Assembly: GCA_026770705.1 (NCBI GenBank)
Contig: JANJGN010001130.1
Coordinates: 1 to 64,000, forward strand
Length of the DNA stretch: 64,000 bases
Direction: 5' to 3'
Source: Isurus oxyrinchus
Taxonomy: Eukaryota
In this document: positions 10,126 through 57,645 of the stretch, in pieces
Layout: every line of letters starts with the position of its first letter
Position numbering within the stretch: position 1 is the first letter of the stretch
Position numbers and translations under genes: made by a program
Notes under the pieces: model-generated
What the model saw: the letters and a program-made list of their open reading frames with translations, nothing else
Databases searched by the model: none
What the model was told of the DNA's origin: nothing

Positions 10126-10165
10126 ATGATCAGGAAATCTTACTTCCTCCTGTCACTTCTCCAAG
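10126..10165 (+). CDS. Siglec-like gene A, signal-peptide exon (MIRKSYFLLSLLQ|V)
   Basis: Acceptor tttcag|10084, ATG 10126, phase-1 donor CAAG|gtaat; joins in frame to the V exon giving MIRKSYFLLSLLQVGLSQEW. Confidence 0.9.
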
Positions 10166-11339
10166 GTAATATCATCATCAGATTTAATGTTAATAGTCTC
10201 TGTCAAGGATCATTCTTATTGAGCTGTGATTGGGAACCGATTCAGCAGTGACCCTGTGCACAAACTCAGACCAAGTCCCATTCACCCATCACCCCTGTGC
10301 TCACTGATATACACTGACTCCCTGTCTGACAGCAGAATTGGAAGTGCTCAGAGATCTCAGAGAGTTGTAGGGACTGGAGGACGTTACAAAGTTCAGCAGA
10401 ATTGTAGCAGCGAGAGCAGGATCTTAAAATTCAGGTGCTGTCAGACGTTGGTCAGTGAGCGATGGGGAGTGATGGGTTGAGTAGAGAAGCAAAGATAAAA
10501 ACTGGGGGATGAAGACTATCCTGCTGCGAGGTCTCCGATAGCAATGGCCTGAAATTTGTGTCCTTTGCTGCCTTTATTCAAAATTTCCCATGAAGACAAC
10601 ACAGCAGCCCCTAGAATAGACAGGCTGTTCAATGTCACACTTCCTGTCCATTCTCACCTTGCTAGATACTTCAATAAGGGAGCAAGATAACTGAAAGAGA
10701 GAAGGAAGGTAAAGCTATCTGTGTGTAAAACTGTCAAATATTCTGAGTTATCATGATTGTCTCTGATCTGCTGCAGAGTTTAAATTTCACAGAATCTGAG
10801 CACTTTGCAGCTCAGAGAGAGACCATTGACTCACTGCCTGAAAGGCCGGTGGAAGCAGATTCAACAGGAACTTTCAGAAGGGGAACTGGATAAATACTTG
10901 AAGGGAAATTTGCAGGGATGTGCGAAAGGTGCTGGAGAGGAATTGGGAAAGAGCCAGCACATGCACGATGGGTCAAATGAGCTCCTCCTGTGTTGTATCA
11001 TTCAACAATCAGACAATTTAAGACCCTTGTCAGCAAAACTTCAGAATCCTGCTGAATCACAGATGTTTCAGAAGGACAGGGAACAAGAAGTTTCTGGTAT
11101 CAGCGTTTCATGTGGGGCCCAGTTCAGTTTGAACAAATAAACAACACCATCTTTGAAAGTCATGAACCCAACACAGCGGCACCTCCGACACATGCAGAGC
11201 TCAGGCTAGAGGCACTTTGTTAGTGTGTTTCACAGTGTCTGCTGGAGTAGGGTCAGTGCTGAGCTTGGGGACAAGTCAGTCTACAATGCTGCATCGGAAT
11301 CAACAATACAACAATATGGGGTTTAGATCAGAAATAATC

Positions 11340-11500
11340 CATTAGACAATGAGGATCCAAAGAGATTCCTTAGACAATGAGGATCCAAAGAGATTCCTTA
11401 GACAATGAGGATCCAAAGAGATTCCTCAGACAATGAGGATCCAAAGAGATTCCTTAGACAATGAGGGTCCAAAGTGATTCCTTAGACAATGAAGATACAA
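11340..11500 (+). repeat. 28-bp VNTR (cttagacaatgaggatccaaagagattc); also ~26925-27165 and ~63280-63340
   Basis: About 6, 9 and 2 units at the same intronic position in three gene copies. Confidence 0.9.
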
Positions 11501-11710
11501 AGTGCACCAATCAGATTGAACCAGATTAGCTAATCAGCTGTGTTGAAGAGCAAACAGGAATGTTAGGCTAATTAGTGATTCATGACGGTGATAATGGGGG
11601 GAGTTCTGAGGGCTCCTAATCCATTGTCCTGTCTTGTAAATCAGCACTGAATGGATCTCAATGGGTGGGTCTCGTAGACACTGTGTTGGGTGGAAGACTG
11701 GCTTCACTAA

Positions 11711-12002
11711 GGGGAAGCGGCAGTAGAGAGGCATTGTCACTGGGCTAGTATTCCAGAGGCCCAGGGTGATGCTCTGGGGCCCTGGGTGTAAATCCCATCA
11801 CAGCAGATGAATGGGATTAAAAAGCCTGGTTCACTGATCCCCTTCAGGGAAGGAAATCTCCACCCTTACCGAGTCTGGCCTACATGTCACTCCAAACCCA
11901 CAGCAATACAATTGATTCTTAAATGCCTCTGATGGACATGGGATGGGTAATAAATGCTGGGCACATCCCATGAACGGATAATTTGAAAAACACATGACTT
12001 GG
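11711..12002 (+). mobile_element. tRNA-type shark SINE with 35-bp target-site duplication
   Basis: Flanked by identical 11676-11710 and 12003-12037; similar SINE copy at ~29885-30195. Confidence 0.8.
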
Positions 12003-12254
12003 AGACACTGTGTTGGGTGGAAGACTGGCTTCACTAAACAGGGTCCTGAGGACCATGAGCCAATGTAGAATGAACTTGTCCACTCCTGTGTCCAGGATTC
12101 TCTTCCATCCATTGTGAAACCTTGGGGAGATCCCTGTGTGTCCTGTAGATGGTCCACACTGCAGCCACTGTGCCCCAGTGATGGACGGGGTGGATATCAA
12201 GTCTAGTGGATCTACAAACCATCCAGAGTTAAATATTGATATTTCTCTCCCCAG

Positions 12255-12623
12255 TTGGACTGTCACAAGAGTGGAAAGGTGACACTCCACGAGAGGTGAC
12301 AGCGCAGGAAAATTCGTGTGTACAGATTCCATGTCATTACAGTTATCCATCACATTTGGAAAGCCAACCACGAGTCGGAGTCTGGTTTAATAATGAGAAT
12401 CAGATGCCTGGATCTCCCATTGCCTTTCACTCCAAGGATCACAGTCACGAGTTACCACGGTTCCACCATCGGACCCGGCTGTCTGGAGACCTGAAAGATG
12501 GCGACTGTTCCCTGATTATAAACAACATCAGACGGGAAGATGCAGGACCTTATTTTTTCAGGATAGAATTTGACAGCAGTAATAGTTACAACTACTATCC
12601 TGTAACCCAGCTTCACGTTTCTG
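12255..12623 (+). CDS. Gene A Siglec V-set Ig domain exon
   Basis: ccag|..|gtaagt, 369 nt, phase 1-1; SCVQIPC, GDCSL, DAGPYFFRIE with the essential Arg codon at 12560-12562. Confidence 0.95.
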
Positions 12624-13023
12624 GTAAGTGCTGTGTTATAATTACTCAACAATTCACTTTCAACATTCAATGGGAATTAACACAAACTGTGACGTTTACA
12701 TATTAACACAAAACACAGCTTATTATAACACACTGTCTGATTCTCAATAACCTGCTGATAGCTTCCAGTTCAGTCCTAAAGCAACCTCTAATACTCACTT
12801 TAATATCAATGATTAAATGTATTGACTGTGTCCATCAAAGTTATCAGGTTATCCACTCTCATCGATCTCTCTAATCCTGTTTAAAATAATTTCCTGATCA
12901 TTGTAATCTCTCAGTTCTGATATCATCCTTGCAAAGGTGCTTTCTCTTGTGGGACTGTGATTTCTATTTGAACTGATGCTTCACGTTATATTTCTCTAAA
13001 AGGATCCATTCTCCGTCTGTTAG

Positions 13024-13320
13024 ATTTCACAGATAAACCCACGATATTCCCTGCTGAAATTATTGCAGGAAAGCCTGTGGATGTAAGCTGCACCTTCAAC
13101 ACAACGTGCAATGGAACAGCAGCACCTGTCTTAACCTGGGACACTCCCACTGACGTACCTGGATCAGTGTCAAACACTGTAACTCAGCATGATGTCACTC
13201 TGTCCTATACTTCTGTTCTGACCCTGATCCCATCACTCAAACACCACGGACACACTCTCAGCTGCAGAGTGAGATATCCATCTGTTTCATCGGAGCGGAC
13301 CCTCGTACTAACTGTACAAG
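13024..13320 (+). CDS. Gene A C2-set Ig domain 1 exon
   Basis: 297 nt, phase 1-1; DFTDKPTIFP..VSCTFNTTCNG..LTW..HHGHTLSCRV; extra Cys fits the Siglec V-C2 interdomain disulfide. Confidence 0.95.
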
Positions 13321-13534
13321 GTAAGTATGGACATCCTTCATTATACATTCGCTGGAACAGTCTATATTGTGCACAGCAGGATCCCATAGAAAGGTATTCT
13401 GATGAGAACCAGATCATCTGTAGTTTAGGGAAAAACACTAACCAGAAAACAGTTAATGACAGTTTCTGAACATTAACACTGGAGCTTTTTTTTCCAGCCA
13501 AGAAGCTGATAGAGCAGAGCATCATTCACAATAT

Positions 13535-14525
13535 ACTAACCCCCTGACAGTGCAGCACTCCCTCAGTACTGACCGCCTGACAGTGCAGCACTCCCTCAGT
13601 ACTGACCGCCTGACAGTGCAGCACTCCCTCAGTACTGATCCTCCAACAGTGCAGCAATCCCTCAGTACTGACCCTCCAACAGTGCAGAACTCCCTCAGCA
13701 CTGACCCTCTGACAGTGTAGCGCTCCCTCAGTACTGACCCTCTGACAGTGCAGCACTCCCTCAGTACTGACCTGCTGAAATTGCAGCTCTCCCTCAGTAC
13801 TGACCCTCTGACATTGCAGCACTCCCTCAGTACTGACCCTCTGACAGTGCAGCACTGCCTCAGTACTGACCCTCCAATAATGAAACAATCCCTCAGTACT
13901 GACTCTCCGACAGTGCAGCACTCCTTCACTGCTGACCCTCCAACTCTGCAGTGCTCCGTCAGGACTGAAAATCTAACATTTCATATCTCCCTCCTGACTG
14001 ACCATCTGAAAATACAACAGATCCTCGGTCGAGTCCTTCAAACAGTGCTGCACTTCCACAGTACAGAATCTCCCCCCCACCCACAGTGCAGCACTTCCAC
14101 AGTACTGAACCTCTGACAGTGCAGCACTCCCTCAGTACTGACCCTCCCACCTGCAGCACTCCCTCAGTACTGACCCTCCCACATGCAGCATTCCCTCAGT
14201 ACTGACCCTCCCACATGCAGCACTCACTCAGTACTGACCCTCCCACAGTGCAGCACTCTCTCAGTACTGACCCTCCCACATGCAGCACTCACTCAGTACT
14301 GACCCTCCCACAGTGCAGCACTCCCTCAGTACTGACCCTCCCACATGCAGCACTCCCTCAGTACTCACCCTCCCACAGTGCAGCACTCCCTCAGTACTGA
14401 CCCTCCCACATGCAGCACTCCCTCAGTACTGACCCTCCCACAGTGCAGCACTCCCTCAGTACTGACCCTCCCACATGCAGCACTCCCTCAGTACTGACCC
14501 TTTGACAGTGCTGCACTACCTCACT
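13535..14525 (+). repeat. 33-bp minisatellite array (intronic)
   Basis: Tandem units. Confidence 0.95.
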
Positions 14526-15414: not shown

Positions 15415-18400
15415 TCACCCTCCAACAGTGCAGAGCTCCCTAATTACCGATCCTCCGACAATGCAGCACTCCCTCAGTACTGAACCTCTGACAGTGCAGA
15501 GCTCCCTAATTACTGACCCTCCGACAATGCAGCACTCTTCCAGTGCTGACCCTCCGACAGTGCAGTATTCCCTAAGTACTGATCCTCCAACAGTGCAGCA
15601 CTGCCTCAATACTGACCCTCCAACAGTGCAGCACTGCCTCAATACTGACCCTCCAACAGTGCAGCACTCCCTCAGTGCTGACCCTCCGACAGTGCAGCAC
15701 TCCCTCAGTACTGACCCTCCGATAGTGCAGCACTCCCTCACTACTGACCCTCCGTCAGAGCAGAGCTCCTAATTACTGACCCTCCAACAGTGCAGCACTC
15801 CCTCAGTACTGACCCTCCAACAGTGCAGAACTCCCTAATTACTGACCCTCTGATAGTGCAGAGCTCCCTCAGTACTGACCCTCCAACAGTGCAGCACTCC
15901 CTCAGTACTGACCCTCCAACAGTGCAGAGCTCCCTAATTACTGACCCACCGACAGTGCAGCACTCCCTCAGTACTGACCCTCTGACAGTGCAGTACTCTT
16001 TCAGTTCTGACCCTCCGACAGTGCAGCACTCCCTCAGTACTGACGCTCCGACAGTGCAGCACTCCCTCAATACTGACCCTCCAACAGTGCAGCACTCCCT
16101 CAGTGCTGACCCTCTGACAGTGCAGAGCTCCCTCAGTACTGACCCTCCGATAGTGCAGCACTCCCTCAGTACTGACCTTCCGACAGTGCAGCAGTCCCTC
16201 ACTACTGACCCTCTGACCGTGCAGCACTCCCTAAATACTGACACTCTGACAGTGCAGCACTCCCTCAGTACTGACCCTCTGACAGTGCAGTACTCTTTCA
16301 GTTCTGACCATCCAACAGTGCAGAGCTCCCTAATTACTGACCCTCCGACAGTGCAGCACTCCCTCAGTACTGACCCTCTGACAGTGCAGCACTCCCTCAG
16401 TACTGACCCTCCCACAGTGCAGCACTCCCTCAGTACTGACCCTCCAACAGTGCAGAGCTCCCTAATTACTGACCCTCCGACAGTGCAGCACCCTCTCAGT
16501 ACTGACCCTCCGACAGTGCAGCACACCCTCAGTACTGAACCTCCGACAGTGCAGAGCTCACTAAATACTGACCCTCCCACAGTGCAACACTCCCTCAGTA
16601 CTGATCCTCCGACAGTGCAACACTCCCTCAGTACTGTTCCACCGACACTGCAGCACTCCCTCAGTACTGATCCTCCGACAGTTCAACACTCCCTCAGTAC
16701 TGTCCCACCGACAGTGCAGCTCTCCCTCAATACTGACCCTCCGACAGTGCACCACTCCATCAGTACTGAACCTTCAACAGTGCAGCACTCCCTCAGTACT
16801 GACCTTCCGACAGTGCAGCAGTCCCTCACTACTGACCCTCTGACCGTGCAGCACTCCCTAAATACTGACACTCTGACAGTGCAGCACTCCCTCAGTACTG
16901 ACCCTCCGACAGTGCAGTACTCTTTCAGTTCTGACCATCCAACAGTGCAGAGCTCCCTAATTACTGACCCTCCGACAGTGCAGCACTCCCTCAGTACTGA
17001 CCCTCTGACAGTGCAGCACTCCCTCAGTACTGACCCTCCCACAGTGCAGCACTCCCTCAGTACTGACCCTCCAACAGTGCAGAGCTCCCTAATTACTGAC
17101 CCTCCGACAGTGCAGCACCCTCTCAGTACTGACCCTCCGACAGTGCAGCACACCCTCAGTACTGAACCTCCGACAGTGCAGAGCTCACTAAATACTGACC
17201 CTCCCACAGTGCAACACTCCCTCAGTACTGATCCTCCGACAGTGCAACACTCCCTCAGTACTGTTCCACCGACACTGCAGCACTCCCTCAGTACTGATCC
17301 TCCGACAGTTCAACACTCCCTCAGTACTGAACCTTCAACAGTGCAGCACTCCCTCAGTACTGATCCTCCAACAGTGCAGCACTCCATCAGTACTGATTCT
17401 CCGACAGTGAAGTACTCACTCAGTACTGACTATGCGGCAGTGAAGCTTTCACAGTACCCACCCACCATCAGTACGGCAGGTCCTCAGTACACACCCTCCA
17501 ACAGGGCAGCACTCCCTCACTACTGACCCTCCGTCAGAGCAGAGCTCCTAATTACTGACCCTCCAACAGTGCAGCACTCCCTCAGTACTGACCCTCCAAC
17601 AGTGCAGAACTCCCTAATTACTGACCCTCCAAAAGTGCAGCCCTCCCTCAGTACTGACCCTCCAACAGTGCAGCACTCACTCAGTACTGACCCTCTGACA
17701 GTGCAGCACTCCCTCAGTACTGACCCTCCCACAGTGCAGCACTCCATCAGTACTGACCCTCCGACAGTGCAGCACTCCCTCAGTACTGACCCTCCAACAG
17801 TGCAGCACTCCCTCACTACTGACCCTCTGACCGTGCAGCACTCCCTAAATACTGACACCCTGACAGTGCAGCACTCCCTCAGTATTGACCCTCCGACAGT
17901 GCAGAGCTCCCTAATTACTGACCCTCCGACAGTGCAGTACTCTTTCAGTTCTGACCCTCCGACAGTGCAACAATACCTCAGTTCTGACCATCCAACAGTG
18001 CAGAGCTCCCTAATTACTGACCCTCCAACAGTGCAGAGCTCCCTAATTACTGACCCTCCGACAGTGCAGCACTCCCTCAGTACTGACCCTCCGACAGTGC
18101 AGCACTCCCTCAGTACTAACCCTCCGACAGTGCAGCACACCCTCAGTACTGATCCTCCGACAGTGCAACACTCCCTCAGTACTGTCCCACCGACAATGCA
18201 GCACTCCCTCAGTACTGATCCTCCGACAGTGCAACACTCCCTCAGTACTGTCCCACCGACAGTGCAGCTCTCCCTCAATACTGACCCTCCGACAGTGCAG
18301 CACTCCATCAGTACTGAACCTTCAACAGTGCAGCACTCACTCAGTACTGATCCTCCAATAGTGCAACACTCCCTCAGCACTGTCCCACCGACAGTGCAGC

Positions 18401-18712
18401 TCTCCCTCAATACTGACCCTCCGACAGTGCAGCACTCCATCAGTACTGAACCTTCAACAGTGCAGCACTCCCTCAGTACTGATCCTCCAACAGTGCACCA
18501 CTCCCTCAGTCCTGATCCTCCAACAGTGCAGCACTCCATCAGTACTGATTCTCTGACAGTGAAGTACTCGCTCAGTACTGACTATGCGGCAGTGAAGCTT
18601 TCACAGTACCCACCCACCATCAGTACAGCAGGTCCTCAGTACTCACCCTCCAACAGGGCAGCACTCCCTCAGTACTGACCCTCCAACAGTGCAGCACTCC
18701 CTCAGTACTGAA
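15415..18712 (+). repeat. 33-bp minisatellite array (~100 units) with higher-order duplications
   Basis: Tandem units; source of the 578-aa and 369-aa repetitive ORFs. Confidence 0.97.
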
Positions 18713-18835: not shown

Positions 18836-19117
18836 ATGCACCACAGAATCTCTCAATTACTTCTCTTGATATGATTAACGCTTCATCGATCAATATAATT
18901 GAGGGGAATTCTGCAGTGATAATCTGCTCTGTCGAGAGCTTCCCAGCTTCTAACCTGACGTGGCGACATCTTAATGTCCCAATGAACAGAACAAGTTCCA
19001 ACAATGAGCTGTGGTTGGTGATTCCTCACGTTACATCCAGGGACACTGGAGACTATCAGTGTGTGGCAGAGAATGAACATGGAGCAGTGGAGGGGTTCAT
19101 AACCATCACTGTGGAAC
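18836..19117 (+). CDS. Gene A C2-set Ig domain 2 exon
   Basis: tttag|..|gtgagt, 282 nt, phase 1-1; DAPQNLSI..EGNSAVIICSVESFPASNLTW..DTGDYQCVAENEHG. Confidence 0.95.
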
Positions 19118-20384: not shown

Positions 20385-20481
20385 GGCGAGATTCCAATGA
20401 ATGGAAAGCAGGATTGCTTGGAGCTGGAATCTGTTTGAGTGTTGGACTGAGTGGATTCTTCATCTTCAAGTGTGTGAGAAA
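20385..20481 (+). CDS. Gene A transmembrane exon (RRDSNEWKAGLLGAGICLSVGLSGFFIFKCVRK)
   Basis: ttacag|..|gtaagt, 97 nt, phase 1-2; paralogous to 55317-55413; missed by the ORF track. Confidence 0.9.
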
Positions 20482-21179: not shown

Positions 21180-21497
21180 CAATTGTTCCCCAATTCCTCA
21201 TTTTGTCTCACAGAGATACATCAACCCTTTCTCATTAAATACACAGAGGGAGCAGCACAGGAAGAGGTCATTCAGCCCAGTCAGAGCGTGTGGGCAGTTC
21301 CTCCCCAGGCGAGCAGTCGGACAGGTACTGGGTAAGTAACGGAACGATTGGTACTCACTTCCACCACCAACACCGTCCTTTGTTGATGTTGTGACTTTAT
21401 AAAGACAGATTCCCATGATTGATGCCTTTGAAAGATTTCTACTGATTATTGAGATCTGGGTGTGAGGCTCAGGTCTGTTGTACAGAACATCTTTCTG
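21180..21497 (+). promoter_or_regulatory. Orphan promoter/exon-1 copy inside gene A, with no leader exon after it
   Basis: Near-identical to 9560-9857; donor at 21332; homology stops at ~21497. Confidence 0.75.
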
Positions 21498-22676: not shown

Positions 22677-22793
22677 AAGAAAGATGAGAAGGATCTGGAA
22701 ATGAAATCGAACCGCGGAGTCAATCCTGATACAGATGATGATCTTTACGCAAACTGTGAATTTGCTGAGGATTCTGTTTATGGGAATTTATAA
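22677..22793 (+). CDS. Gene A terminal cytoplasmic exon (KKDEKDLEMKSNRGVNPDTDDDLYANCEFAEDSVYGNL*)
   Basis: ttctattacag| acceptor, phase 0, two Tyr motifs, TAA 22791-22793; AATAAA 23567-23572. Confidence 0.8.
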   Translation, partial: KKDEKDLEMKSNRGVNPDTDDDLYANCEFAEDSVYGNL

Positions 22794-26099: not shown

Positions 26100-26139
26100 A
26101 TGATCAGGAAATCTTACTTCCTCCTGTCACTTCTCCAAG
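26100..26139 (+). CDS. Extra signal-peptide exon (MIRKSYFLLSLLQ); orphan, or an alternative first coding exon of gene B
   Basis: Intact acceptor (cacag|26067), ATG and phase-1 donor; no V exon before the next promoter. Confidence 0.7.
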
Positions 26140-28312: not shown

Positions 28313-28352
28313 ATGATCGGGAAATCTTACTTCCTCCTGTCACTTCTCCAAG
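28313..28352 (+). CDS. Gene B signal-peptide exon (MIGKSYFLLSLLQ)
   Basis: ATG 28313, CAAG|gtaat phase 1. Confidence 0.9.
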
Positions 28353-33715: not shown

Positions 33716-34081
33716 CTGAACCCTCACAAGAGTGGAAAGGTGACACTCCACGAGAGTTGACATCTCAGGAAGGTTCGTGTGTACAGATTCCATGTCATTA
33801 CAGTTATCCATTGTGTCTGGAAAACCAACCACGAGGTGGAGTCTGGTTTAATAATGAGGAATGGAGAACAACGTCTATAGCCTTTCACTCCAAGGATCAC
33901 AGTCACGAGTTACCACGGTTCCACCATCGGACCCGGCTGTCTGGAGACCTGAAAGATGGCGACTGTTCCCTGATTATAAACAACATCACATGGGAAGATG
34001 CAGGACCTTATTTTTTCAGAATAGAATTTGACAACAGTAATAGTTACAGCTACTATCCTGCAACCCAGCTTCACATTTCTG
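33716..34081 (+). CDS. Gene B Siglec V-set exon
   Basis: 366 nt, phase 1-1, open; YFFRIE with Arg at 34018-34020. Confidence 0.93.
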
Positions 34082-34809: not shown

Positions 34810-35106
34810 AATTCACAGATAAACCCACGATATTCCCTGCTGAAATTATTGCAGGAAAGCGTGTGGATGTAAGCTGCCCCTTCAACACAACGTGCAATGG
34901 AACAGCAGCACCTGTCTTAACCTGGGACACTCCCACTGACGTACCTGGATCAGTCTCAAACACTGTAACTCAGCATGATGTCACTCTGTCCTATACTTCT
35001 GTTCTGACCCTGATCCCATCACTCAAACACCACGGACACACTCTCAGCTGCAGAGTGAGATATCCATCTGTTTCATCGGAGCAGACCCTCGTACTAACTG
35101 TGCAAG
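34810..35106 (+). CDS. Gene B C2-set domain 1 exon
   Basis: 297 nt, phase 1-1, nearly identical to 13024-13320. Confidence 0.93.
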
Positions 35107-35439
35107 GTAAGTTGAGATATCCTTCATTCTACATCAGCACTCCCTCAGCGCTGACCCTCTGACAGTGCAGCCCGTTCTCAGTGTCCACATTCTCAGACCT
35201 CTCAATTAGCTTCACAGTCCATAGAAGTTAATTGATCTTTATTTGATTGTTGCTGAATGAAGAGACAAGCTGTTTAAACTTTAAATCTCACACACATTAT
35301 TTTCCATGGCAACACATCCACCTATCAGAGACCACTTGCCAACCAATCAGCACTCTCTTCCCTTTAAATATAAATTGTTGTTCACTCTCTGTTGGTAAAC
35401 ATGCGATCTGTCTTGTTGAGTCCTGCCCTGATATCTGGA

Positions 35440-35582
35440 TATCACAATGAACAGAACAAGTTCCAACAATGAGCTGTGGTTGGTGATTCCTCACGTTACA
35501 TCCAGGGACACTGGAGACTATCAGTGTTTGGCAGAGAATGAACATGGAGCAGTGGAGGGATTCATAACCATCACTGTGGAAT
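35440..35582 (+). pseudogene. Gene B C2-set domain 2 remnant (acceptor and 5' half replaced by foreign sequence)
   Basis: MNRTSSNNELWLVIPHVTSRDTGDYQCLAENEHG..TVE|gtgagt; intronic homology to gene A stops at ~35245. Confidence 0.85.
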
Positions 35583-37265
35583 GTGAGTGTACACAGATTT
35601 CATCATCTGTCTCAGATTGAAACATGACACAAACACACACAAATATACAGACCTAAATAGACACCTGCAGATACACAATCCCTCGTATATGAGCACACAC
35701 AAAGACACAAACAAACACACTAGCACAATACTCCCCAGTGGGTTACCTGACCTCCCTCAGTGCTGCACTGGAGAGTTGACCTGGATTCTGAGATTTTTGT
35801 TCCCTTTCATGTTTATGGAAGAATATGGAAATTGCAAAGTCTATTACAGACACTCAGATGCATAGAGACACTCACAGATACTCTCTGTCTCTCCAACTCT
35901 CTATCCTCCTTTAAGAAGCTTCCTGAAACCTAACCCTTTGACCAGTCAATTGTCCCAACTCCTCCTTACATGAATCTGTGTGAAATTTTGTTTGAGTATC
36001 TGAGAGTAAGAGAGAGGTGGAGAGGTTTAGGAAGGGAATCCCTGTTGGTGAAAAGCTTACATCATGTTCTCACTTTTCCACTGCCCGTATTTCACCTGAT
36101 GTCCAATGTCCTTGTTTATAATAGGGATTGCCTATGTAAACGTCACGCTGTAGTTACACTGTACCACCAGTGGTGCACAGTAGAACTTAACCCTTGCATC
36201 TCTCAGCTTTTCAAGCAAATCCACTTCCCAGTTTGCCTCACAAGCTGTGAGTTCATCGGAATTAAATTATTTCTAAAACGGTAGATTTGATGTCATTTTA
36301 TTGAAAACTTCCTCAGTGCCTCCCTGAAGGGTTTACACTCTCTGGGAAGCAGGAATAGGCTGGATGTTGGGGAGTTCATCTTTTCCCAGAGAGCAGTGAT
36401 CCTCGGGAATGTGCTGTCTGTGGGTGTGGTGGTTGCTGTTGCTCTGTTGCCTTCAAGAGGGATCTGGAGTGGTTACTGACTGGGGGAGAGATCATGGAAG
36501 TGGAGAATGATACAGCACAGGAGGAAGCCATTCAGCCCATTGTGCCTGTGCCAGGTCTTTCAATGTTCTATCCCATCAGATCCACTAACCACCACTCCAC
36601 TTTGCCCCCATCTTCCTCCTTCAAGTGTTTATCCAATTCCCCTTTTGAAAGTTCCTATTGAATCTGCTTCCACCGCCCTTTCAGGCAGCACCTTCCAGAT
36701 CACAACAACTCGCTCTGTCAAAACAAATTCTCCTCATCTCCCCCTCCAGTTCGTCAATCTGTGTCCCTCTGGTTACTGACCCTCCTGCCCCGTAAATACA
36801 TCGATACTGTTCACCTCAACCACTCCCAGTGGGAGCGAGTTCCACATTCTCCCCTCTCTCTGGGTAAAGATTGGAACTGTTTATTAAGCGGGGGGTGTAA
36901 GTCCATGGGGGATTCCATCTCGATCCTGCCCGATTCGCACACACGTCCGAGATGGATTTCCATCCTTCACAAAACGTTTCCAGAATTTTCTACAGCACAA
37001 TCCTGTACACAGCGATGGAGAGAAACATTGGACAGGGAGTCCAACAGCACAATGATCCATTCTCACCAATGTTCCACGCTAAGGGGAAAGTTCCGATTGT
37101 CCACTCTTAGAGTGTTTACAGTGAAAACATTCATTCCACATTGAATCCCAGTGGATGGGTCAATATTACAGCAAATGTTGCAGTGATATGAAGCTTGATT
37201 GCTCAGCCAGAGTGAGAGATTGAAAGCGGAGAGTCAGTGATGATTTCTTTCTGTGTGTTCTCTAG

Positions 37266-37405
37266 ACAGTGGAGGAGAGATTCTGCACGTGATCCTGATC
37301 CTGGGAATACGAGTTGTGATATTCCTTGTGGCTGTGGCTATCACTATCGCTGGAGTCTGTGTCTGGGAGGAACAAACAGTGAAAGGAAGTCGACAGACTG
37401 TTTGA
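37266..37405 (+). CDS. Gene B terminal exon: TM with Arg and a short tail (SGGEILHVILILGIRVVIFLVAVAITIAGVCVWEEQTVKGSRQTV*)
   Basis: ttctttctgtgtgttctctag| acceptor; the phase-1 frame gives a ~25-aa hydrophobic segment with CGA (Arg) at 37310-37312; TGA 37403-37405; AATAAA 38389-38394. Confidence 0.85.
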
Positions 37406-37429
37406 AGAATTGTACAGCAACAATCTCAT

Positions 37430-40549: not shown

Positions 40550-40589
40550 ATGATCGGGAAATCTTACTTCCTCCTGTCACTTCTCCAAG
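40550..40589 (+). CDS. Gene C signal-peptide exon (MIGKSYFLLSLLQ)
   Basis: tttcag|40508, ATG 40550, phase-1 donor. Confidence 0.9.
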
Positions 40590-46744: not shown

Positions 46745-47119
46745 TTGGACTATCACAAGTGTGGAAAGTCAACACTCCACGAGAGGTGACAGCGCAGGAA
46801 GGTTCGTGTGTACAGATTCCATGTAATTACAGTTATCCATCATATTTAGTAGCGAGATCAGCAGTCGGAATCTGGTATATGAGAAGGAATTTGGAAACAT
46901 GGAATGAACGGTCTATAGCCTTTCACTCCAAGAATCACAATCACAAGTTAACACGGTTCCACCATCGGACCCGGCTGTCTGGAGACCTGAAAGATGGTGA
47001 CTGTTCCCTGATTATAAACAATGTCAGACGGGAAGATGCAGGATATTATTTATTCAGAACAGAATTTGACAGCAGGAATAGATACAACGACCGTCCTGAA
47101 ACCCAGCTTCACGTTTCTG
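46745..47119 (+). CDS. Gene C V-set exon 1 (intact, most divergent V)
   Basis: gtag|..|gtaagt, 375 nt, phase 1-1; YYLFRTE with Arg at 47056-47058. Confidence 0.9.
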
Positions 47120-47384: not shown

Positions 47385-48690
47385 CGTGTAAACCCCCGTC
47401 CCATCTCCAGCCTCTCTATCCCCTCCAAAGTCCTTGAACGTGTTTCCATCTCCCAAATCCTTTCCCATCTTTCCCGGAACTCCATGTTTGAATCCCTCCA
47501 ATCAGGTTCCCACCCCAGCCACTGTGCTGAAACAGCTCTTATCAAGGTCACAAATGGCATCCTGTGTGACTGTGACAAAGGTCAACTTTCCCTCCTCGTC
47601 CTTCTCGATCTGTCTGCAGCCTTTGACACGCTCGACCACACCATCCTCCTCCAACACCTCTCCACTGTCGTCCAGCTGGGTGGGACTGCTCTCCCCTGGC
47701 TCCATTCTTATCCATCTCATCGTAGCCAGAGAATCACTTGCAATGGCTTTGCAGCATCATTTGAACAGTGTTAGTTTTCACCTGTCCACTGAGGATCCCC
47801 AGCTCTACCTCACCACCACCTCTCTCGACTCCTCCACTGCTGCTAAATTATCAGGCTGCTTATCCAACATCCAGTACTGGATGGGCAGAAATTCCCTCCA
47901 ATGAAATATTGGAAAGACTGAAGCCATTGTCTTCATTCCCCGCTCCAAACTCTGTTCCCTCGCTACCAACTCCATTCCTCTCCCTGGCAGCTCTCTGAGA
48001 TTGAAGCCAATCTGTTCACAGCTTTGTTGTCCCATTTGATCCTGAGATGAGCTTCCGGCCTCATATCTGCGCCCTCACTAACACCGTCTATTTCCACCTC
48101 CGTAACATCGCACGACTTCAACCTGTCTCAGCTCATCTGCTGCTGAAACCCTCATCCACGCCTTCATTACCTCCAGACTCGACTGTTCCAACACACGCTC
48201 TACACTCCATAAACTTGAGGCTATCCAAAACTGCTGACCACGTCCTTACTCAAACCAAGTCCCGTTCCCTTATCACCCGCTCTGCTCGATGACCGAGACT
48301 GGCTCCTGGTCAAGCAAAGTCTCAATGTCACAATTATTGAATATTTTTCCTCCCCATTACAGTAATCCTCACCTCTTGCTTCAGCCATGGCAACCCTCCC
48401 TATCTCAGGAGCCTCCTCCAGCCCCTACAACCCTCCCTATCTCTGTAACCTCCTCCAGCCCCTACAATCCTCTGAGATCTCTGCACTCCTCTGATTCCGG
48501 TCTCTTGAGCTACCCCCGATTCCCATCGTTGTGCCATTGGAAGCCATGCCTTCTGCTGCCTGGGGCCCCGAGCTCTGGAATTTTATCTCTAAACCTCTCC
48601 CCACCTCTCCCTCTCTCTCAATCTCTCTCTCTCTCACTCTCTCTTTCTCACTCTCTCCCTCTCTCTCTCTCGCTATCCCTTTTATCCCTA
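47385..48690 (+). mobile_element. L2-clade LINE RT remnant
   Basis: PISSLSIPSKVLERV..QSG..ETALIKVTN..LLVLLDLSAAFDTLDH. Confidence 0.85.
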
Positions 48691-49567: not shown

Positions 49568-49935
49568 TTGGACTGTCACAAGAGTGGAAAGGTGACACTC
49601 CACGAGAGGTGACAGCGCAGGAAGGTTCGTGTGTACAGATTCCATGTCATTACAGTTATCCATCGTGTCTGGAAAACCAACCGCGAGGTGGAGTCTGGTT
49701 TAATAATGAGAAACAGATTCCCTGGGCTCCCATTGCCTTTCACTCCAAGGATCACAGTCACCAGTTACCACGGTTCCGCCATCGGACCCGGCTGTCTGGA
49801 GACCTGAAAGATGGCGACTGTTCCCTGATTATAAACAACATCTGACGGGAAATGCAGGACCTTATTTTTTCAGAATAGAATTTGACAATGGTCCGAGCCA
49901 TAACTATTACCCTGTAACCCAGCTTCACGTTTCTG
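49568..49935 (+). pseudogene. Gene C V-set exon 2, disabled
   Basis: AGA>TGA at 49843-49845 plus a 1-nt deletion a few bases later (368 nt versus 369); splice sites intact. Confidence 0.9.
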
Positions 49936-50748: not shown

Positions 50749-51045
50749 ATTTCACAGATAAACCCACGATATTCCCTGCTGAAATTATTGCAGGAAAGCG
50801 TGTGGATGTAAGCTGCACCTTCAACACAACGTGCAATGGAACAGCAGCACCTGTCTTAACCTGGGACACTCCCACTGACGTACCTGGATCAGTCTCAAAC
50901 ACTGTAACTCAGCATGATGTCACTCTGACCTATACTTCTGTTCTGACCCTGATCCCATCACTCAAACACCACGGACAGACTCTCAGCTGCAGAGTGAGAT
51001 ATCCATCTGTTTCATCGGAGCGGACCCTCGTACTAACTGTGCAAG
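50749..51045 (+). CDS. Gene C C2-set domain 1 exon
   Basis: 297 nt, phase 1-1, open. Confidence 0.93.
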
Positions 51046-51242: not shown

Positions 51243-51309
51243 GACTATCAGTGTGTGGCAGAGAATGAACATGGAGCAGTGGAGGGGTTCATAACCATCA
51301 CTGTGGAAT
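51243..51309 (+). pseudogene. Gene C C2-set domain 2 remnant (3' 67 nt only)
   Basis: DYQCVAENEHGAVEGFITITVE|gtgagt; 5' part and native acceptor deleted. Confidence 0.85.
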
Positions 51310-51631
51310 GTGAGTGTGGAGATACATTTGTTTGTTTGTTGTCTCCGTGGTCTCCGTGGAGCCATTGGGATCGTGTTGTTTTTAATCCAGTTTTCTTCAA
51401 TCCTCGCTCAGTCCACGTTATCCACACACCCAATTTTTCCTCTCCCTTTCTGTTTTTGCTCTCAGTTTCTCCTTCAATGGTTGTCAGGACAAGGCTGTCA
51501 GGTCTTCGTTTCCAATCTCCGTACTTGATGAACTTTCTCTCTCTAACTGTCCTGAACAACCCTTTTAATTGCTGAACATCTCCTCTTGATCTAAGTCACT
51601 CATTGGTCTTTCTGTCCATCCAGCTGATTCT

Positions 51632-52700
51632 GAGCATCTGGCAGCATCTGTGGAGAGAAAGACAGGGTTAGCGTTTGGAGTCTGTATGACTCCTCTTCAG
51701 AGCTAAAGGGAAGTAGACATGTGGTGAAATATATCGTCTAAGGGGGGGGCGATGGGACAGGTGGAGCTGGATAGAAAACCAGCGATAGGTGGAGGCAATG
51801 GAGAGATTGTGGAAGATGTCATAAACAAAAGGTCAAAGGGTTGTTAACAGTGGTGGTATTGGATAAAGGAGGTGCTAATGGTGACATTAAGCAGAGTGTG
51901 ATAATGGGCGGACCAGGTTAAGCACTCTGGAAAGAGACAGATGGCCCTCGTGGGGGTGTGGCAGGGGAGGGGACGGTGGAGGGAATAAAGATCGAAAACA
52001 GACTAAAACCTGCGGATAAAACAATCAATAAAAATGGAAATGAATTTCAAATAATAATAATAAAAATAAGTGGAAAACAGTTAACAAATAAAACAAATAA
52101 AATGAATACATAAAAAAAGGGTTCAAAAAGCAGTGAAGATCGAGGAGAGAGTTCATGACCAGAAATTGTTGAATTCAATATTCAGTCGGGAAGGCTGTAA
52201 AGTGCCAGGTCGGAAGATGAGGTGTTGTTCCTCCAGTTTGTGTTGGGCTTCACTGGAACAATGCAGCAGGCCAAGGACGGACATGTGGGCATGAGAGCAG
52301 GGTGGGGTGTTAAAATGGCAAACGACAGGGAGGTCTGGGTCATGCTTGTGGACAGACCGAAGGTGTTCATCAGAGCGATCACCCAGTCTGTGTTTGGTCT
52401 GTCCCATGTAGAGGAGACCACATTGGGAGCAGTGAATGCAGTAGATTAAATTGAAGGAAGTGTACATGAAGCGCTGCTTCACCTGGAAGGAGTGTTTGGG
52501 TCATTGGACAGTGAGGGGGGAGGAAGTAAAGGGGCAGGTGTTGCACTTTCTGTAAATGCATGGGAAGATGTCATCGGAGAGGGTTGAGGTGCTAGGGGTG
52601 ATGGAGGAGGGGACCAGGGTGTCCTGGAGGGAATGATCCCTGTGGAATGCCAAAGGGGTGGGGGTGAAGGGAAGATGCTTTTGATGGTGGTCAGATTTTG
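51632..52700 (-). mobile_element. Penelope-like element (GIY-YIG endonuclease)
   Basis: ORF 52153-52482: IYCIHCSQCGLLYMGQTKHRLGDR..EHLRSV..PVVCHFN. Confidence 0.88.
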
Positions 52701-53558: not shown

Positions 53559-53852
53559 ATAAGCCGGAGATTTCCCAGCAGTCGGAGTGCACTTGGAGGT
53601 CAGAGGGGGTCACCTGCGTCTGTGTGGCCAACTCCAACCCACCCGGAGACCTCACCTGGCACCTGCCCAGTGCCAACATCAGTGGTAACCAAACACACGG
53701 AGGTTTTGTGTCGTGGCAGGTCAGAGATGGGCATCTGGTGACTGGTTCCCTCACCCTGATGAGACCCCAGGATGAGGGGGGAGTGATTGCATCCTGCTCG
53801 GTTCAAAACCCACACGGGGAAGACATGTTCAAGGAGTATCTGTGGGTCAAAG
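53559..53852 (+). CDS. Gene C membrane-proximal C2-set exon (MAG-Ig5/Siglec-5-like)
   Basis: ctcctcag|..|gtgaga, 294 nt, phase 1-1; KPEISQQSECTWRSEGVTCVCVANSNPP..ASCSVQNPHG. Confidence 0.92.
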
Positions 53853-55316: not shown

Positions 55317-55413
55317 GTAGAGACTCCAGTAAATGGACAGTAGAATTGTTCACGGCTGGGATCATGTTGAGTGTTTCCCTGGCTGGAATCTTCATCTTCA
55401 TCTGTGTGAGAAA
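55317..55413 (+). CDS. Gene C transmembrane exon (GRDSSKWTVELFTAGIMLSVSLAGIFIFICVRK)
   Basis: ttacag|..|gtaagt, 97 nt, phase 1-2. Confidence 0.92.
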
Positions 55414-56100
55414 GTAAGTTTGAAGACTTAACTTGATTTTAATATAAACATTTGTTTAGGACTAATTGGACAGTTTTTACAAAGGGCCAGCACAGGCACG
55501 ATGGGCTGAGTGGCTTCCTCCTGAGCTGTGAGATTTTAAATTCTTTCAACGAATGTAACTGTCACTGGTGAGGCCGTTATTAAATTGCCCATCTCTAATT
55601 GCCCCTTGAGAAGATGGTGGTGAGCTGCCTTCTTGACCCGCTGCAGTCCATGTGGTGTAGGTACACCCACAGTGCTGTTAGAGAGGGAGTTCCAGGATTT
55701 TAACCCAGCGACAGTGAAGGAACGGTGATATATTTCCAAGTCAGGATGGTGAGTGACTTGGAGGGGAACTTCCAGGTGGTGGTGTTCCCATGTGTCTGCT
55801 GCCCTTGTCCTTCTAGATGGTAGAGGTCGTGGGTTTGGAAGGAGCTGTCAAAGGAGCCTTGCTGATTTGCTGCAGTGCATCTTGTAGATGGTACACACAC
55901 TGCTGCCACTGTGTGTTCGTGGTGGAGGGAGTGAATGTTTAATGTGGTGGATGGGGTGTCGATCAATCGGGCTGCTTTGTGCAGAACTGATTTAAAGAGA
56001 CAGTCCCAGTTGTTGGTGTAAGGTTACAGTGGGCTCTGTGTCTGTGCTGCACTGACTCTCTGCTATGTGATAACCACAGTGTGATATTGTGTTATTGCAG

Positions 56101-56182
56101 GAGAAAGACAGCGACGGAGGAGAGAGTTTCAGGGACCAGTGACATTGCATTGACCCCCAGTTCACTCTCTGTGAAGCACCAG
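56101..56182 (+). CDS. Gene C cytoplasmic exon 1 (KRKTATEERVSGTSDIALTPSSLSVKHQ)
   Basis: ttgcag|..|gtacag, 82 nt, phase 2-0; bridges the TM and the last exon in frame. Confidence 0.85.
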
Positions 56183-56321
56183 GTACAGGAACTGTTTACA
56201 CTCACTCCAAAGCTTCAATCTCAGTGTGTAGACAACATGTGTCCCAGATTCCCTGCCCAGTTACCCACTGATTTGTACCTGTGGAGTCAGCAATGGTTCA
56301 GTATCATGCTGTCTCTCTGTT

Positions 56322-57030
56322 AGGACACAGCAACTGGTAAAGGCTGTTGTTTAAAATCCCAGAGGGAAACTTTAAACAACTGTCATAACCTATATTTCCC
56401 AGTGGAACGTTTGAGATGCAGCTCTAAATTCAGGAATAAGACCACCAGTTCTCGAGATGGTTTTATATCAATCTACATGAGACATTTATTAATTTACACA
56501 AGTTAAACATATGCACATGGCTAAAAACTAGTATTATCATAACTTTTTAACAAATTCCCAAACTAATCTCCTCTAAGACAACACATAGACTTTAAGCAGA
56601 TTCCAGCAAAGCATTTTCACCTCACAAATTCCAAATGAGGTTCCTTTCACTTTGGTTCCTTTGCAGACAGGTGTAGGCTTACAGCTGCTTTGATGTTACA
56701 AGCCTCTGCTCTGCACACACAAAACTGCTCAAGTTATACCCAGCTCTTCTCTTTGAATGTAAATTCTCATTGAATCATCAGGACCTTTGAACTCCACCCT
56801 TCATCGTATCAATTTTATTCGTAATATAAACATTGATTCGTTTAAGATTTCACTTTCAGACATTGAATGCTCTGTTTAAAAATGCAAATTACCCCTTTAC
56901 CTCTTTGTTTACATCTCAAAACTACTTGACATCAAAGTACCCAGACTGGCTGGCTTTAATCCAATTAAAACACACACACACACCCACAGACTAAATCCCT
57001 GTTTAAAAAGACAATTTCCACTTACATTAC
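56322..57030. mobile_element. Solo-LTR-like repeat, same family as 60135-60963
   Basis: Shared gacacagc..ggtaaaggctg..aaatcccagagggaaa..aacaactgtc and gctggctttaatccaattaa. Confidence 0.6.
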
Positions 57031-57396
57031 ATACATTAATAGATTAATAACACCCTATCTCTATCCCTTTCTCTCTTTCTCTTCCCTCTCATCCTCTCTC
57101 TGATTACAAGGTTCTTGTTAATGAGCCTCACGTCAGGCACCTGAGTGCAGAATCCAAGCCGGCACTCACCAGAGCCATTACCGAGGGAGTGCGAGACTGA
57201 CAGAGGGTCAGTCCTGAGGGAGTGCTGCGCTGTCGGGGATCAGTACTGAGGGAGTAGTTGGTTTCTTTTATATGATATGAGAGAGACAGTAAAAGCAACT
57301 GAGACACGACTGACAGTAACGAGGCTGCACAATAATTTAACTCTATCAGCGCCAGTAAATGATGTGAGGATGTCTTCTGTTTCCATTTCTCTGTAG

Positions 57397-57645
57397 GGTA
57401 AACAGAACGTGCTGATTACTGAGCCCCGGAACACAACCAGAGACACAACTAGCGAGGGGGAGACCCCAGTTCCCCGGGGTCTCTCTGAAGGTGCAGTGGG
57501 AGGTGATGCTGGACATGGGAACCCTGACAATCCCGCCGAGCTTCTCTACGCCAATCCCCAAGTCTTCAGGGTGCCCAGTGGTGATGGGTCTGTCCACAGG
57601 GAAGAGGAGACGGAATACGCACAGATCAGATTCAAGCGAAACTGA
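57397..57645 (+). CDS. Gene C terminal exon with degenerate ITIM (ELLYANP) and ITSM (TEYAQI)
   Basis: ctgtag| phase 0; TEYAQIRFKRN*; AATAAA 58227-58232. Confidence 0.92.
   Translation, partial: GKQNVLITEPRNTTRDTTSEGETPVPRGLSEGAVGGDAGHGNPDNPAELLYANPQVFRVPSGDGSVHREEETEYAQIRFKRN

What the first reader, a model, noticed from the sequence alone, without database searches (positions are those of the whole stretch)
10126..57645. Paired activating/inhibitory Siglec receptor cluster in a shark
Seen: three tandem genes share near-identical leader and C2-1 exons and Arg-intact V domains but end in three different signalling modules. B has a TM Arg and a tyrosine-free 12-aa tail (predicted 280 aa). C has a TM with no basic residue and an LLYANP/TEYAQI tail (predicted 477 aa). 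A has a neutral TM and a DLYANC/SVYGNL tail (~425 aa by one splice route). Established: this is the design of the mammalian SIGLEC5/14 and SIGLEC11/16 pairs, where activating members recruit ITAM adaptors to counter pathogen sialic-acid mimicry. Inference: sharks built their own paired Siglec system. I know of no characterised case in cartilaginous fish but cannot search to confirm.
Basis: partly seen in the sequence, partly recalled or inferred. Interest (0 to 1): 0.9.

Follow-up and report, generated by a model that had tools for sequence, protein, structure and literature searches.

The report
Shark Siglec-like receptor genes, three tails
Three neighbouring shark immune-receptor genes of the sialic-acid-sensor (Siglec) type share almost the same front end but end in an 'activate' or one of two 'hold back' signalling modules, a design known from mammals but apparently built independently and not yet described in print for sharks.

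Summary
Three head-to-tail genes on the + strand share a 40-nt leader exon and a 96-97% identical C2-1 exon. Each has a Siglec-type V exon with the key Arg. My exon tables give 428 aa for A, 280 aa for B and 477 aa for C.

B ends in a transmembrane exon with a buried Arg and a 12-residue tyrosine-free tail. Its C2-1-to-TM splice (GT..AG, 35106>37266) appears in contigs of all four runs laid. A ends in DLYANC/SVYGNL; C ends in LLYANP/TEYAQI.

The V domain matches Siglecs best by sequence and by predicted fold. It falls in an elasmobranch clade apart from tetrapod CD33-related Siglecs.

Caveats:
- The V domains are only 66-84% identical, so these are not strict pairs like SIGLEC5/14.
- C carries a second V exon with an in-frame TGA and a 1-bp deletion but intact splice sites.
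- C's proximal motif is not a canonical ITIM.
- B's V is a 'second-position' type standing alone.
- Adaptor and ligand are unknown.

NCBI already auto-names homologues in other sharks as Siglec or CD33-like. This scan found the same family on other pieces of this genome. I found no paper on it. This is a new variant of a known kind, of moderate interest.

The parts
10126..10165 (+). Gene A exon 1: leader (MIRKSYFLLSLLQ + 1 nt)
   Evidence: ATG start and GT donor; five near-identical copies in the window.
12255..12623 (+). Gene A exon 2: Siglec-type V-set domain with Arg (YFFRIE)
13024..13320 (+). Gene A exon 3: C2-1 domain (C-x5-C plus F-strand Cys)
   Evidence: The acceptor type is confirmed on the B copy by loose ends.
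18836..19117 (+). Gene A exon 4: second C2/I-set domain, intact only in A
20385..20481 (+). Gene A exon 5: uncharged TM (AGLLGAGICLSVGLSGFFIF) + KCVRK
   Evidence: 96.7% identical to Carcharodon XP_041037180.
21247..21331 (+). Gene A exon 6: cytoplasmic exon, inside a block repeated upstream of every leader
22677..22793 (+). Gene A exon 7: tail with DLYANC and terminal SVYGNL (ITIM consensus), then stop
26100..26139 (+). Orphan leader exon in a duplicated 5' block, with no V exon behind it
28313..28352 (+). Gene B exon 1: leader
   Evidence: The splice to V_B was not tested.
33716..34081 (+). Gene B exon 2: V-set domain with Arg; starts AEPSQEW and carries the extra Cys33 (second-position type)
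34810..35106 (+). Gene B exon 3: C2-1 domain
   Evidence: (loose ends at 34812; joint leaving 35106)
35430..35597 (+). Gene B: truncated relic of the C2-2 exon (3' part only), skipped by the observed splice
37266..37405 (+). Gene B exon 4: TM with Arg (ILHVILILGIRVVIFLVAVAITIAGVCVW), 12-aa Tyr-free tail EEQTVKGSRQTV, stop
   Evidence: (GT..AG joint 35106>37266 in 4 runs)
40550..40589 (+). Gene C exon 1: leader
46745..47119 (+). Gene C V1 exon: intact, Arg present (YLFRTE)
   Evidence: pairs with the first V of Cetorhinus XP_078389734
49568..49935 (+). Gene C V2 exon: broken (in-frame TGA plus 1-bp deletion), AG/GT splice sites intact
50749..51045 (+). Gene C C2-1 exon
51243..51315 (+). Gene C: 73-nt relic of the C2-2 exon
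53559..53852 (+). Gene C membrane-proximal C2 exon; best PDB match is MAG domain 5
   Evidence: end corrected
55317..55413 (+). Gene C TM exon (VELFTAGIMLSVSLAGIFIFICVRK): no basic residue inside, one Glu at its outer edge
56101..56182 (+). Gene C cytoplasmic exon (RKTATEERVSG...SVKHQ)
57397..57645 (+). Gene C last exon: LLYANP and TEYAQI motifs, stop
62052..62091 (+). Leader exon of a fourth gene that runs off the window

Best explanation
This is a stretch of a large, recently duplicated, elasmobranch-specific family of Siglec-type (I-type lectin) immune receptor genes. The genes lie head to tail. Segmental duplication copied a common front end: promoter-side block, leader, V exon and C2-1 exon. 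Exon loss and exchange then joined that front end to one of three older 3' cassettes.

- **Gene B** carries the activating cassette, a transmembrane helix with a buried Arg and almost no tail. By analogy with mammalian receptors it would need an ITAM-bearing adaptor chain to reach the surface and signal. This step is inferred.
- **Gene A** carries a neutral TM and a tail with two YxN tyrosines, the last inside an ITIM consensus (SVYGNL).
- **Gene C** carries a CD33-related-type tail with a degenerate proximal motif and a distal TEYAQI. After phosphorylation, A and C would recruit SH2 phosphatases or Grb2-type adaptors (inferred).

The V exon is the fastest-changing part of the unit. The members therefore probably see related but not identical sialylated ligands. 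The system looks like a birth-and-death family of activating and inhibitory receptors, as in KIR, LILR or CD33-related Siglecs, and not like one tightly matched pair.

Gene C in this assembly is damaged or depends on skipping its dead second V exon.
For: **Shown**
- The exon tables have AG/GT sites and fitting phases.
- Leader and 5' blocks are 86-92% identical in five copies.
- C2-1 exons are 98% identical in DNA, the V exons 89-92%, and the intron between them 94-95%.
- The V domain is a Siglec by sequence, by Pfam Ig_CD22 above its cut-off, and by predicted fold: pLDDT 91, and the top 45 PDB matches are all Siglecs.
- Arg101 and the three V cysteines are invariant or nearly so across 30 homologues.
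- A GT..AG joint at exactly 35106>37266 is seen in contigs of four runs from two studies.
- The TM-Arg cassette with invariant VILILGIR occurs in two proteins that NCBI names as from Scyliorhinus and Chiloscyllium, one more Scyliorhinus protein named pIgR-like, and one protein I did not name.
- A-type and C-type tails recur in many elasmobranch homologues.
- The elasmobranch V clade is split from the tetrapod CD33-related clade with SH-aLRT 99.
- C's two V exons pair with the first and second V of one basking-shark protein.
Against: - No RNA evidence was obtained for A or C, or for the leader-to-V splice of B.
- The joint has short sides (21-30 letters). The runs are only guessed to be RNA, and the contigs could come from a near-identical paralogue elsewhere.
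- The V domains are too different for a strict pair.
- C has a dead V exon with live splice sites, a Glu at the TM edge, and LLYANP in place of an ITIM.
- B's V has the extra Cys found only in V domains that sit behind another V (0 of 25 first V, 6 of 9 later V), yet no upstream V exon exists in B.
- FcR-gamma was reported absent from cartilaginous fish (PMC4016189), so the adaptor is unknown.
- No ligand data exist.
Confidence: 0.62

Rival explanations
1. The genes are real Siglec-like receptors, but each has its own ligand and they are not functional partners. The shared front end only reflects recent duplication. The different tails reflect random cassette exchange in a birth-and-death family, with no balancing of one signal against the other.
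For: - V domains are 66-84% identical in protein. The V exon diverges more than the adjacent intron in two of three comparisons (P = 0.04 and 0.004; the third is 0.27), with dN/dS of 0.7-1.3.
- Introns are 94-95% identical, so the duplications are recent.
- Relics of exons and an orphan leader show ongoing gain and loss.
Against: - Families of this kind in mammals (KIR, LILR, CD33-related Siglecs) are still regarded as activating/inhibitory systems.
- All three tail types are conserved across shark orders, which argues for selection on having each type.
Confidence: 0.22
2. Part or all of this particular cluster is dead or dying. C is a pseudogene, B is a remnant that lost its first V exon, and the spliced contigs come from intact paralogues elsewhere in the genome.
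For: - C's V2 exon has a TGA and a frameshift with intact splice sites.
- B and C hold exon relics, and there is an orphan leader.
- V_B is of the second-position type but stands alone.
- Reads were accepted from 95% identity, and many loose ends clearly come from paralogues.
Against: - All coding exons of A and B, and all of C except V2, are open with intact splice sites.
- C2-1 exons are more conserved than the introns.
- The joint lies exactly on B's exon borders in four runs.
Confidence: 0.1
3. The receptors have a Siglec fold but do not bind sialic acid. They recognise another ligand, so 'Siglec' would be a structural label only.
For: - No binding data exist.
- The family is not nested in any mammalian Siglec clade.
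- From my knowledge, some mammalian Siglec-like genes that keep the fold have lost sialic-acid binding.
Against: - The F-strand Arg is kept in 90% or more of 30 homologues and in all intact V exons here.
- The Cys pattern and the predicted fold match sialic-acid-binding Siglecs.
Confidence: 0.06

Closest known systems
Human SIGLEC5/SIGLEC14 and SIGLEC11/SIGLEC16 paired receptors
   Same: - Neighbouring genes with a Siglec V-set domain that keeps the Arg, followed by C2 domains.
- One member has tyrosine motifs in its tail.
- The other has a basic residue in the TM and a short tail without motifs.
   Different: - The V domains here are 66-84% identical. The human pairs are nearly identical there through gene conversion (from my knowledge).
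- The shark genes sit in a separate clade.
- There are three tail types, not two.
- Stacked V exons occur.
- The adaptor is unknown.
CD33-related Siglecs of tetrapods
   Same: - Short receptors: one V plus one to three C2 domains.
- The C-type tail has a proximal L-x-Y-A-x-(I/L) motif in most shark homologues and a distal TEYAQI. Tetrapod hits have TEYSEI.
- The V domain evolves fast.
- The genes lie in tandem clusters.
   Different: - The V domains are not nested in the tetrapod clade (SH-aLRT 99 split), so orthology is not shown.
- Published work states that fish genomes lack CD33-related Siglecs (PMC7226832; teleosts only).
Myelin-associated glycoprotein (Siglec-4)
   Same: - The V domain matches MAG as well as it matches CD33-related Siglecs.
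- C2-1 matches MAG domain 2.
- C's membrane-proximal C2 matches MAG domain 5 at 4e-11.
- NCBI names the sawfish homologue 'MAG-like'.
   Different: - MAG is a single conserved five-domain gene. This is a multigene family with 2-3 domains and immune-type tails.
- Of the Siglecs in this search only MAG matched with such a domain, so the domain-5 match may partly reflect what has been solved.
Primate Siglec-12 (two V-set domains)
   Same: Gene C and many shark homologues have two or more V exons in a row. The monkey Siglec-12 hit also has two V domains.
   Different: - The tandem V arose independently, since the shark and primate V domains lie in different clades.
- The shark later-position V carries an extra Cys.
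Other paired Ig-superfamily families (KIR, LILR, CD300, teleost NITR)
   Same: Multigene clusters in which similar ectodomains are joined to ITIM tails or to charged TM segments. They evolve by duplication and exon shuffling.
   Different: Their V or C2 domains are not of the Siglec type. This comparison rests on my knowledge and was not tested here.

Membership tests
Siglec (I-type lectin) family | N-terminal V-set Ig domain with the conserved F-strand Arg | tested here: met
   YFFRIE/YLFRTE aligns with the YFFRVE of Siglec-5. R101 is kept in 90% or more of 30 homologues.
Siglec (I-type lectin) family | Three-Cys pattern in V (two near strand B, one in strand E), plus an extra Cys early in C2-1 for the inter-domain bond | tested here: met
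   C21, C26 and C83/84 are invariant or nearly so. C2-1 has SC-x5-C and an F-strand Cys. The bonds themselves are inferred.
Siglec (I-type lectin) family | V domain closest to known Siglecs by sequence and by fold | tested here: met
   - PDB phmmer: 17 Siglec sequences at 5e-15 to 1.5e-12; the next match is pIgR at 6e-8.
- Pfam Ig_CD22 scores 38-41 bits against a cut-off of 27.
- Foldseek ranks 1-45 are all Siglecs, TM-score 0.78-0.90.
Siglec (I-type lectin) family | Sialic-acid binding that depends on the Arg | not testable with these tools
   Needs V-Fc proteins, glycan arrays and Arg-to-Ala mutants.
CD33-related Siglec subfamily (orthology) | V domain nested within the tetrapod CD33-related clade | tested here: not met
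   The quick ML tree of 122 V domains splits the tetrapod clade (bat Siglec-8, monkey Siglec-12, frog and turtle genes) from the clade holding the shark family, SH-aLRT 99. The tree has no MAG, sialoadhesin or Siglec-15 anchors and no outgroup.
CD33-related Siglec subfamily (orthology) | Tail with a proximal ITIM and a distal ITIM-like TEYSEI-type motif | tested here: inconclusive
   Gene C has TEYAQI but LLYANP (Pro at +3). Other shark homologues have LLYASI or ILYANI with TEYAQI.
Paired activating/inhibitory receptors | Activating member: basic residue inside the TM, short tail without motifs | tested here: met
   B has ILHVILILGIRVVIF... followed by EEQTVKGSRQTV. The Arg is invariant in the four database proteins that carry the cassette.
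Paired activating/inhibitory receptors | The activating form is really spliced and expressed | tested here: met
   The GT..AG joint 35106>37266 is seen in four runs. Caveats: the sides are 21-30 letters, the RNA status of the runs is a guess, and a near-identical paralogue cannot be excluded.
Paired activating/inhibitory receptors | Inhibitory member with an ITIM ([ILVS]xYxx[ILV]) | tested here: met
   A has SVYGNL at its C-terminus. C has only the ITSM-like TEYAQI. These are motifs only; no binding was tested.
Paired activating/inhibitory receptors | Partners share a nearly identical ligand-binding domain | tested here: not met
   V domains are 83.5% (A-B), 71% (A-C1) and 66% (B-C1) identical in protein. 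Only leader and C2-1 are near-identical.
Paired activating/inhibitory receptors | Activating member associates with an ITAM adaptor (DAP12, FcR-gamma or CD3-zeta type) | not testable with these tools
   No shark adaptor sequence was at hand. FcR-gamma was reported absent from cartilaginous fish in 2014 (PMC4016189).

The most novel reading that the evidence does not exclude
Cartilaginous fish independently built a large CD33-related-like Siglec system. Fast-evolving, sometimes stacked V domains are combined with three conserved signalling cassettes: TM-Arg, a YxN/ITIM tail, and an ITIM/TEYAQI tail. On this reading, balanced activating and inhibitory sensing of sialic acid is either as old as jawed vertebrates or arose by convergence. 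That would go against the published view that fish lack this kind of Siglec.
Probability: 0.45. Interest if true: 0.7.

Novelty: new variant of a known kind. Interest (0 to 1): 0.58.

Why it matters
Published work on fish Siglecs lists only Siglec-1, CD22, MAG and Siglec-15, and states that fish genomes lack inhibitory CD33-related Siglecs (PMC7226832). That work looked at bony fish.

A shark family with the CD33-related design would change that picture. It has short V+C2 receptors, ITIM-type tails, activating TM-Arg members and a fast-evolving V domain. It would give a second, independent example for testing why such systems arise, for instance through pressure from pathogens that mimic host sialic acids. 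It would also raise the question of which adaptor chain serves TM-Arg receptors in sharks.

The value is tempered in three ways. Homologues already carry automatic Siglec names in NCBI. The scan has met the family elsewhere in this genome. Everything about function is still inferred.

Tried and rejected
- **Spliced models not searched.** Exons were searched one by one, and junction codons and lengths were checked in a script without building the joined proteins.
- **The look-up of encoding contigs was closed.** I could not check whether the white-shark locus with XP_041037177-80 keeps the same A-B-C order.
- **TM-Arg cassette search.** The search for homologous proteins on the cassette region of P0006 gave only 2 hits from 7 candidates. 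This is too few to map its spread, so local phmmer on the proteins already fetched was used.
- **Hidden first V exon in gene B.** tblastn over 28353-33715 found nothing below E = 2.
- **Shark adaptor papers.** Searches with DAP12 and TYROBP gave nothing useful beyond PMC4016189.
- **Careful tree.** It did not finish in the time allowed, so only the quick tree is reported.
- **Read depth.** Depths were not used as evidence of expression level, because all the runs are contigs.
- **Other family assignments.** CD22 orthology was rejected because white-shark 'CD22-like' falls outside the family clade. A pIgR/CD300-type V domain was rejected because pIgR matches only a 39-residue stretch, at 6e-8.
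- **Assembly gaps.** The N runs at 1464-1615 and 6383-6554 were left untouched.

Full report
**What is in the window**

The window is vertebrate genomic DNA, rich in satellites and retroelement pieces. On the + strand, a 40-nt leader exon occurs five times, at 10126, 26100, 28313, 40550 and 62052. It has an ATG, encodes MIR/GKSYFLLSLLQ, ends in phase 1 and has a GTAAT donor. Each copy sits in a 1-2 kb block that is 86-92% identical between copies.

Behind three of the leaders lie V-set exons: A at 12255-12623, B at 33716-34081 and C at 46745-47119. Gene C has a second V exon at 49568-49935. Each V exon is followed by a 297-nt C2-1 exon at 13024, 34810 or 50749.

Downstream, the three genes differ.
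- **Gene A** has an I-set-like C2-2 exon (18836-19117), a neutral TM exon (20385-20481), a small cytoplasmic exon (21247-21331) and a last exon that ends ...DLYANCEFAEDSVYGNL* (22677-22793).
- **Gene B** goes from C2-1 straight to a final exon (37266-37405). It encodes DSGGEILHVILILGIRVVIFLVAVAITIAGVCVWEEQTVKGSRQTV*.
- **Gene C** has a further C2 exon (53559-53852), a TM exon (55317-55413), a cytoplasmic exon (56101-56182) and a last exon that ends ...LLYANPQVFRVPSGDGSVHREEETEYAQIRFKRN* (57397-57645).

All junctions are AG/GT and all phases fit. This gives 428 aa for A, 280 aa for B and 477 aa for C when its second V exon is left out (the end of C's exon 4 was corrected by hand to 53852). The joined models were not searched or folded. 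All searches were made exon by exon.

**Details the finding does not state**

- C's second V exon carries an AGA-to-TGA change and, 8 nt further on, a 1-bp deletion. Its acceptor and donor are intact.
- B and C hold truncated relics of A's C2-2 exon, at 35430-35597 and 51243-51315. Both therefore descend from an A-like gene.
- The leader at 26100 is an orphan in a duplicated 5' block, and no V-like sequence follows it.
- The leader at 62052 starts a fourth gene that runs off the window.

**Are they Siglecs?**

- *Sequence.* The V exon of A matches 17 Siglec sequences in the PDB at 5e-15 to 1.5e-12: Siglec-5, -8, -10, MAG, CD33, sialoadhesin and Siglec-7. The next protein, pIgR, matches only a 39-residue stretch at 6e-8. 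Siglec-15 and CD22 score much lower.
- *Key residue.* The alignment puts GPYFFRIE on GSYFFRVE of Siglec-5, so the shark Arg falls on the Arg of that motif. By my knowledge this is the Arg that binds sialic acid.
- *Pfam.* The hits are V-set and, above its cut-off, Ig_CD22.
- *Conservation.* In an alignment of 30 homologues, the Arg and the three cysteines of the V domain are invariant or nearly so. C2-1 has the early C-x5-C pair that Siglecs use for the inter-domain bond (the use is from my knowledge).
- *Fold.* An AlphaFold2 model of V_B has a mean pLDDT of 91. Its first 45 Foldseek matches in the PDB are all Siglecs, with TM-scores of 0.78-0.90.
- *Other domains.* C2-1 matches nectin-4, MAG domain 2 and the CD33 C2 domain. 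C's last C2 matches MAG domain 5 at 4e-11.

Membership in the Siglec family is therefore met on every feature that sequence can test. Ligand binding cannot be tested here.

**Which Siglecs?**

A HMMER scan of 1.8 billion representative proteins found 1258 relatives. The closest are all from sharks and rays. NCBI names them automatically as Siglec-8, -11, -12, -13, -14, CD33-like or MAG-like. The species named are Carcharodon, Cetorhinus, Scyliorhinus, Mustelus, Hemiscyllium, Chiloscyllium, Stegostoma, Pristis and Hypanus.

I built a quick maximum-likelihood tree of 122 V domains.
- The elasmobranch sequences, including all four window V exons, fall into one group (support 82).
- That group lies on the other side of a 99-supported split from a tetrapod clade. 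The tetrapod clade holds bat Siglec-8, monkey Siglec-12 and frog and turtle genes.
- White-shark 'CD22-like' falls outside the family.
- C's two V exons pair with the first and second V of one basking-shark protein. Gene C is therefore an old two-V gene whose second V died in this lineage or in this individual.

The tree has no curated MAG, sialoadhesin or Siglec-15 anchors and no outgroup. It shows an independent expansion but does not show where that expansion attaches.

**Is the activating form real?**

I laid the contigs of four public runs on 33000-38400. Three runs come from one sample and one from another study, and their RNA status is a guess.
- All four show one joint that leaves 35106 and enters 37266, with GT..AG ends. 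This is exactly the C2-1 donor and the TM-exon acceptor.
- Loose ends at 34812 also fix the C2-1 acceptor at the upstream AG (TTAG|A.TTCACAG).

Weak points remain. The shorter side of the joint is only 21-30 letters. Reads were accepted from 95% identity. Other loose ends clearly come from paralogues, for example full C2-2 exons and V-to-V junctions. The result therefore shows that a B-type message exists, from this gene or from a near-identical copy.

Independent support comes from conservation. The cassette, with an invariant VILILGIR, ends four database proteins. Two carry Siglec names from Scyliorhinus torazame and Chiloscyllium punctatum, one is a Scyliorhinus protein named pIgR-like, and one I did not name.

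**Are the others inhibitory?**

- A's last six residues, SVYGNL, fit the ITIM consensus. DLYANC does not. Both tyrosines are YxN.
- C's TEYAQI fits the ITSM-like distal motif (tetrapod hits have TEYSEI). LLYANP has Pro at +3. Most other shark homologues have LLYASI or ILYANI there, while the white-shark orthologue also has LLYANP.
- Both tail types recur across elasmobranchs.

This is motif evidence only.

**Is it a pair?**

Leader and C2-1 are nearly identical, but the V domains are not. In protein, A-B are 83.5% identical, A-C1 71% and B-C1 66%.

In DNA the V exon is 89-92% identical, the intron next to it 94-95% and the C2-1 exon 98%. The V exon is significantly more diverged than the intron in two of three comparisons, and more diverged than C2-1 in all three. 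dN/dS for V is 0.7-1.3.

The ligand-binding domain is thus the fastest-changing part. This resembles what I recall of CD33-related Siglecs in general, but it is unlike SIGLEC5/14, where conversion keeps the binding domains the same (my knowledge). 'Same design' holds at the level of the family, not at the level of a matched pair.

**Further doubts**

- V_B starts AEPSQEW and has an extra Cys33. Among shark homologues this Cys is found in 0 of 25 first-position V domains and in 6 of 9 later-position ones. Yet B has no V exon upstream. B may have lost its first V.
- C needs to skip a dead exon that still has good splice sites. C also has a Glu at the outer edge of its TM where orthologues have Gly.
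- FcR-gamma was reported as absent from cartilaginous fish (PMC4016189), so the adaptor for the TM-Arg cassette is open.

**What is known**

The held literature gave no paper on shark or ray Siglecs. The whale-shark genome paper only lists Siglecs among Ig families. The main paper on fish Siglecs states that fish lack CD33-related Siglecs, but it covers teleosts only.

Earlier notes of this scan describe the same family on other pieces of this genome, with the same reading. I checked their claims on the TM-Arg cassette, the dead V exon and the extra Cys myself.

**Verdict**

This is another stretch of a large elasmobranch-specific Siglec-like family that combines a shared front end with activating or tyrosine-motif tails. 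It is a new variant of a known kind, of moderate interest.

Noticed in passing
window 9582-9689, 25576-25656, 27782-27862, 40013-40099, 61538-61618 (and A's own exon 21247-21331): About 440-540 bp upstream of every leader lies a copy of gene A's small cytoplasmic exon (…STGRGHSAQAERVGSSSPGEQSDRS). Most copies are more like the white-shark A-type protein (72-81%) than A's own exon is (64.5%). The duplication unit seems to run from the 3' part of an A-type gene into the next gene's leader.
   Followed up: partly
window 33716-34081 and 49568-49935: V_B and the dead V2 of gene C both carry an extra Cys at position 33 (YPLC/YPSC). In shark homologues this Cys occurs only in V domains that sit behind another V (0 of 25 against 6 of 9). 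In gene B the domain stands alone, so the Cys would be unpaired.
   Followed up: yes
window 33715 (loose ends): Contigs in run X1 join the 3' end of a V exon (…TTCACGTTTCTG) directly to a V_B-like exon start. V-to-V splicing therefore occurs in transcripts of some family member. No such upstream V exists in gene B here.
   Followed up: partly
window 13530-14523 and 15417-18711: About 4.3 kb of a 33-bp satellite (ACAGTGCAGCACTCCCTCAGTACTGACCCTCC-type) fills gene A's intron between C2-1 and C2-2. It gives long false ORFs on both strands. Shorter arrays lie at 6751-7040, 27321-27492 and 38752-39727.
   Followed up: no
window 24139-25410 and 22077-22578: A 43-bp satellite (period 43, higher order 432) lies between gene A and the orphan leader. 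A 24-bp satellite lies in A's last intron.
   Followed up: no
window 47340-47771 (+) and 52156-52482 (-): Two retroelement pieces lie inside gene C's introns. One is a reverse-transcriptase fragment (Pfam RVT_1, 5e-8) just behind V1. The other is a weak GIY-YIG-like ORF (E = 0.025).
   Followed up: partly
window 55328-55333: Gene C's TM exon reads WTVELFTAG where the white-shark and basking-shark orthologues read WTVGLLTAG or WTLGLLTAG. This places a Glu at the outer edge of the helix and may be another sign of relaxed constraint on C.
   Followed up: no
window 1-1000: The window starts with about 1 kb of C-rich CCCACC-type simple repeat (GC skew -0.68). Two N runs follow at 1464-1615 and 6383-6554; they were left untouched.
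   Followed up: no
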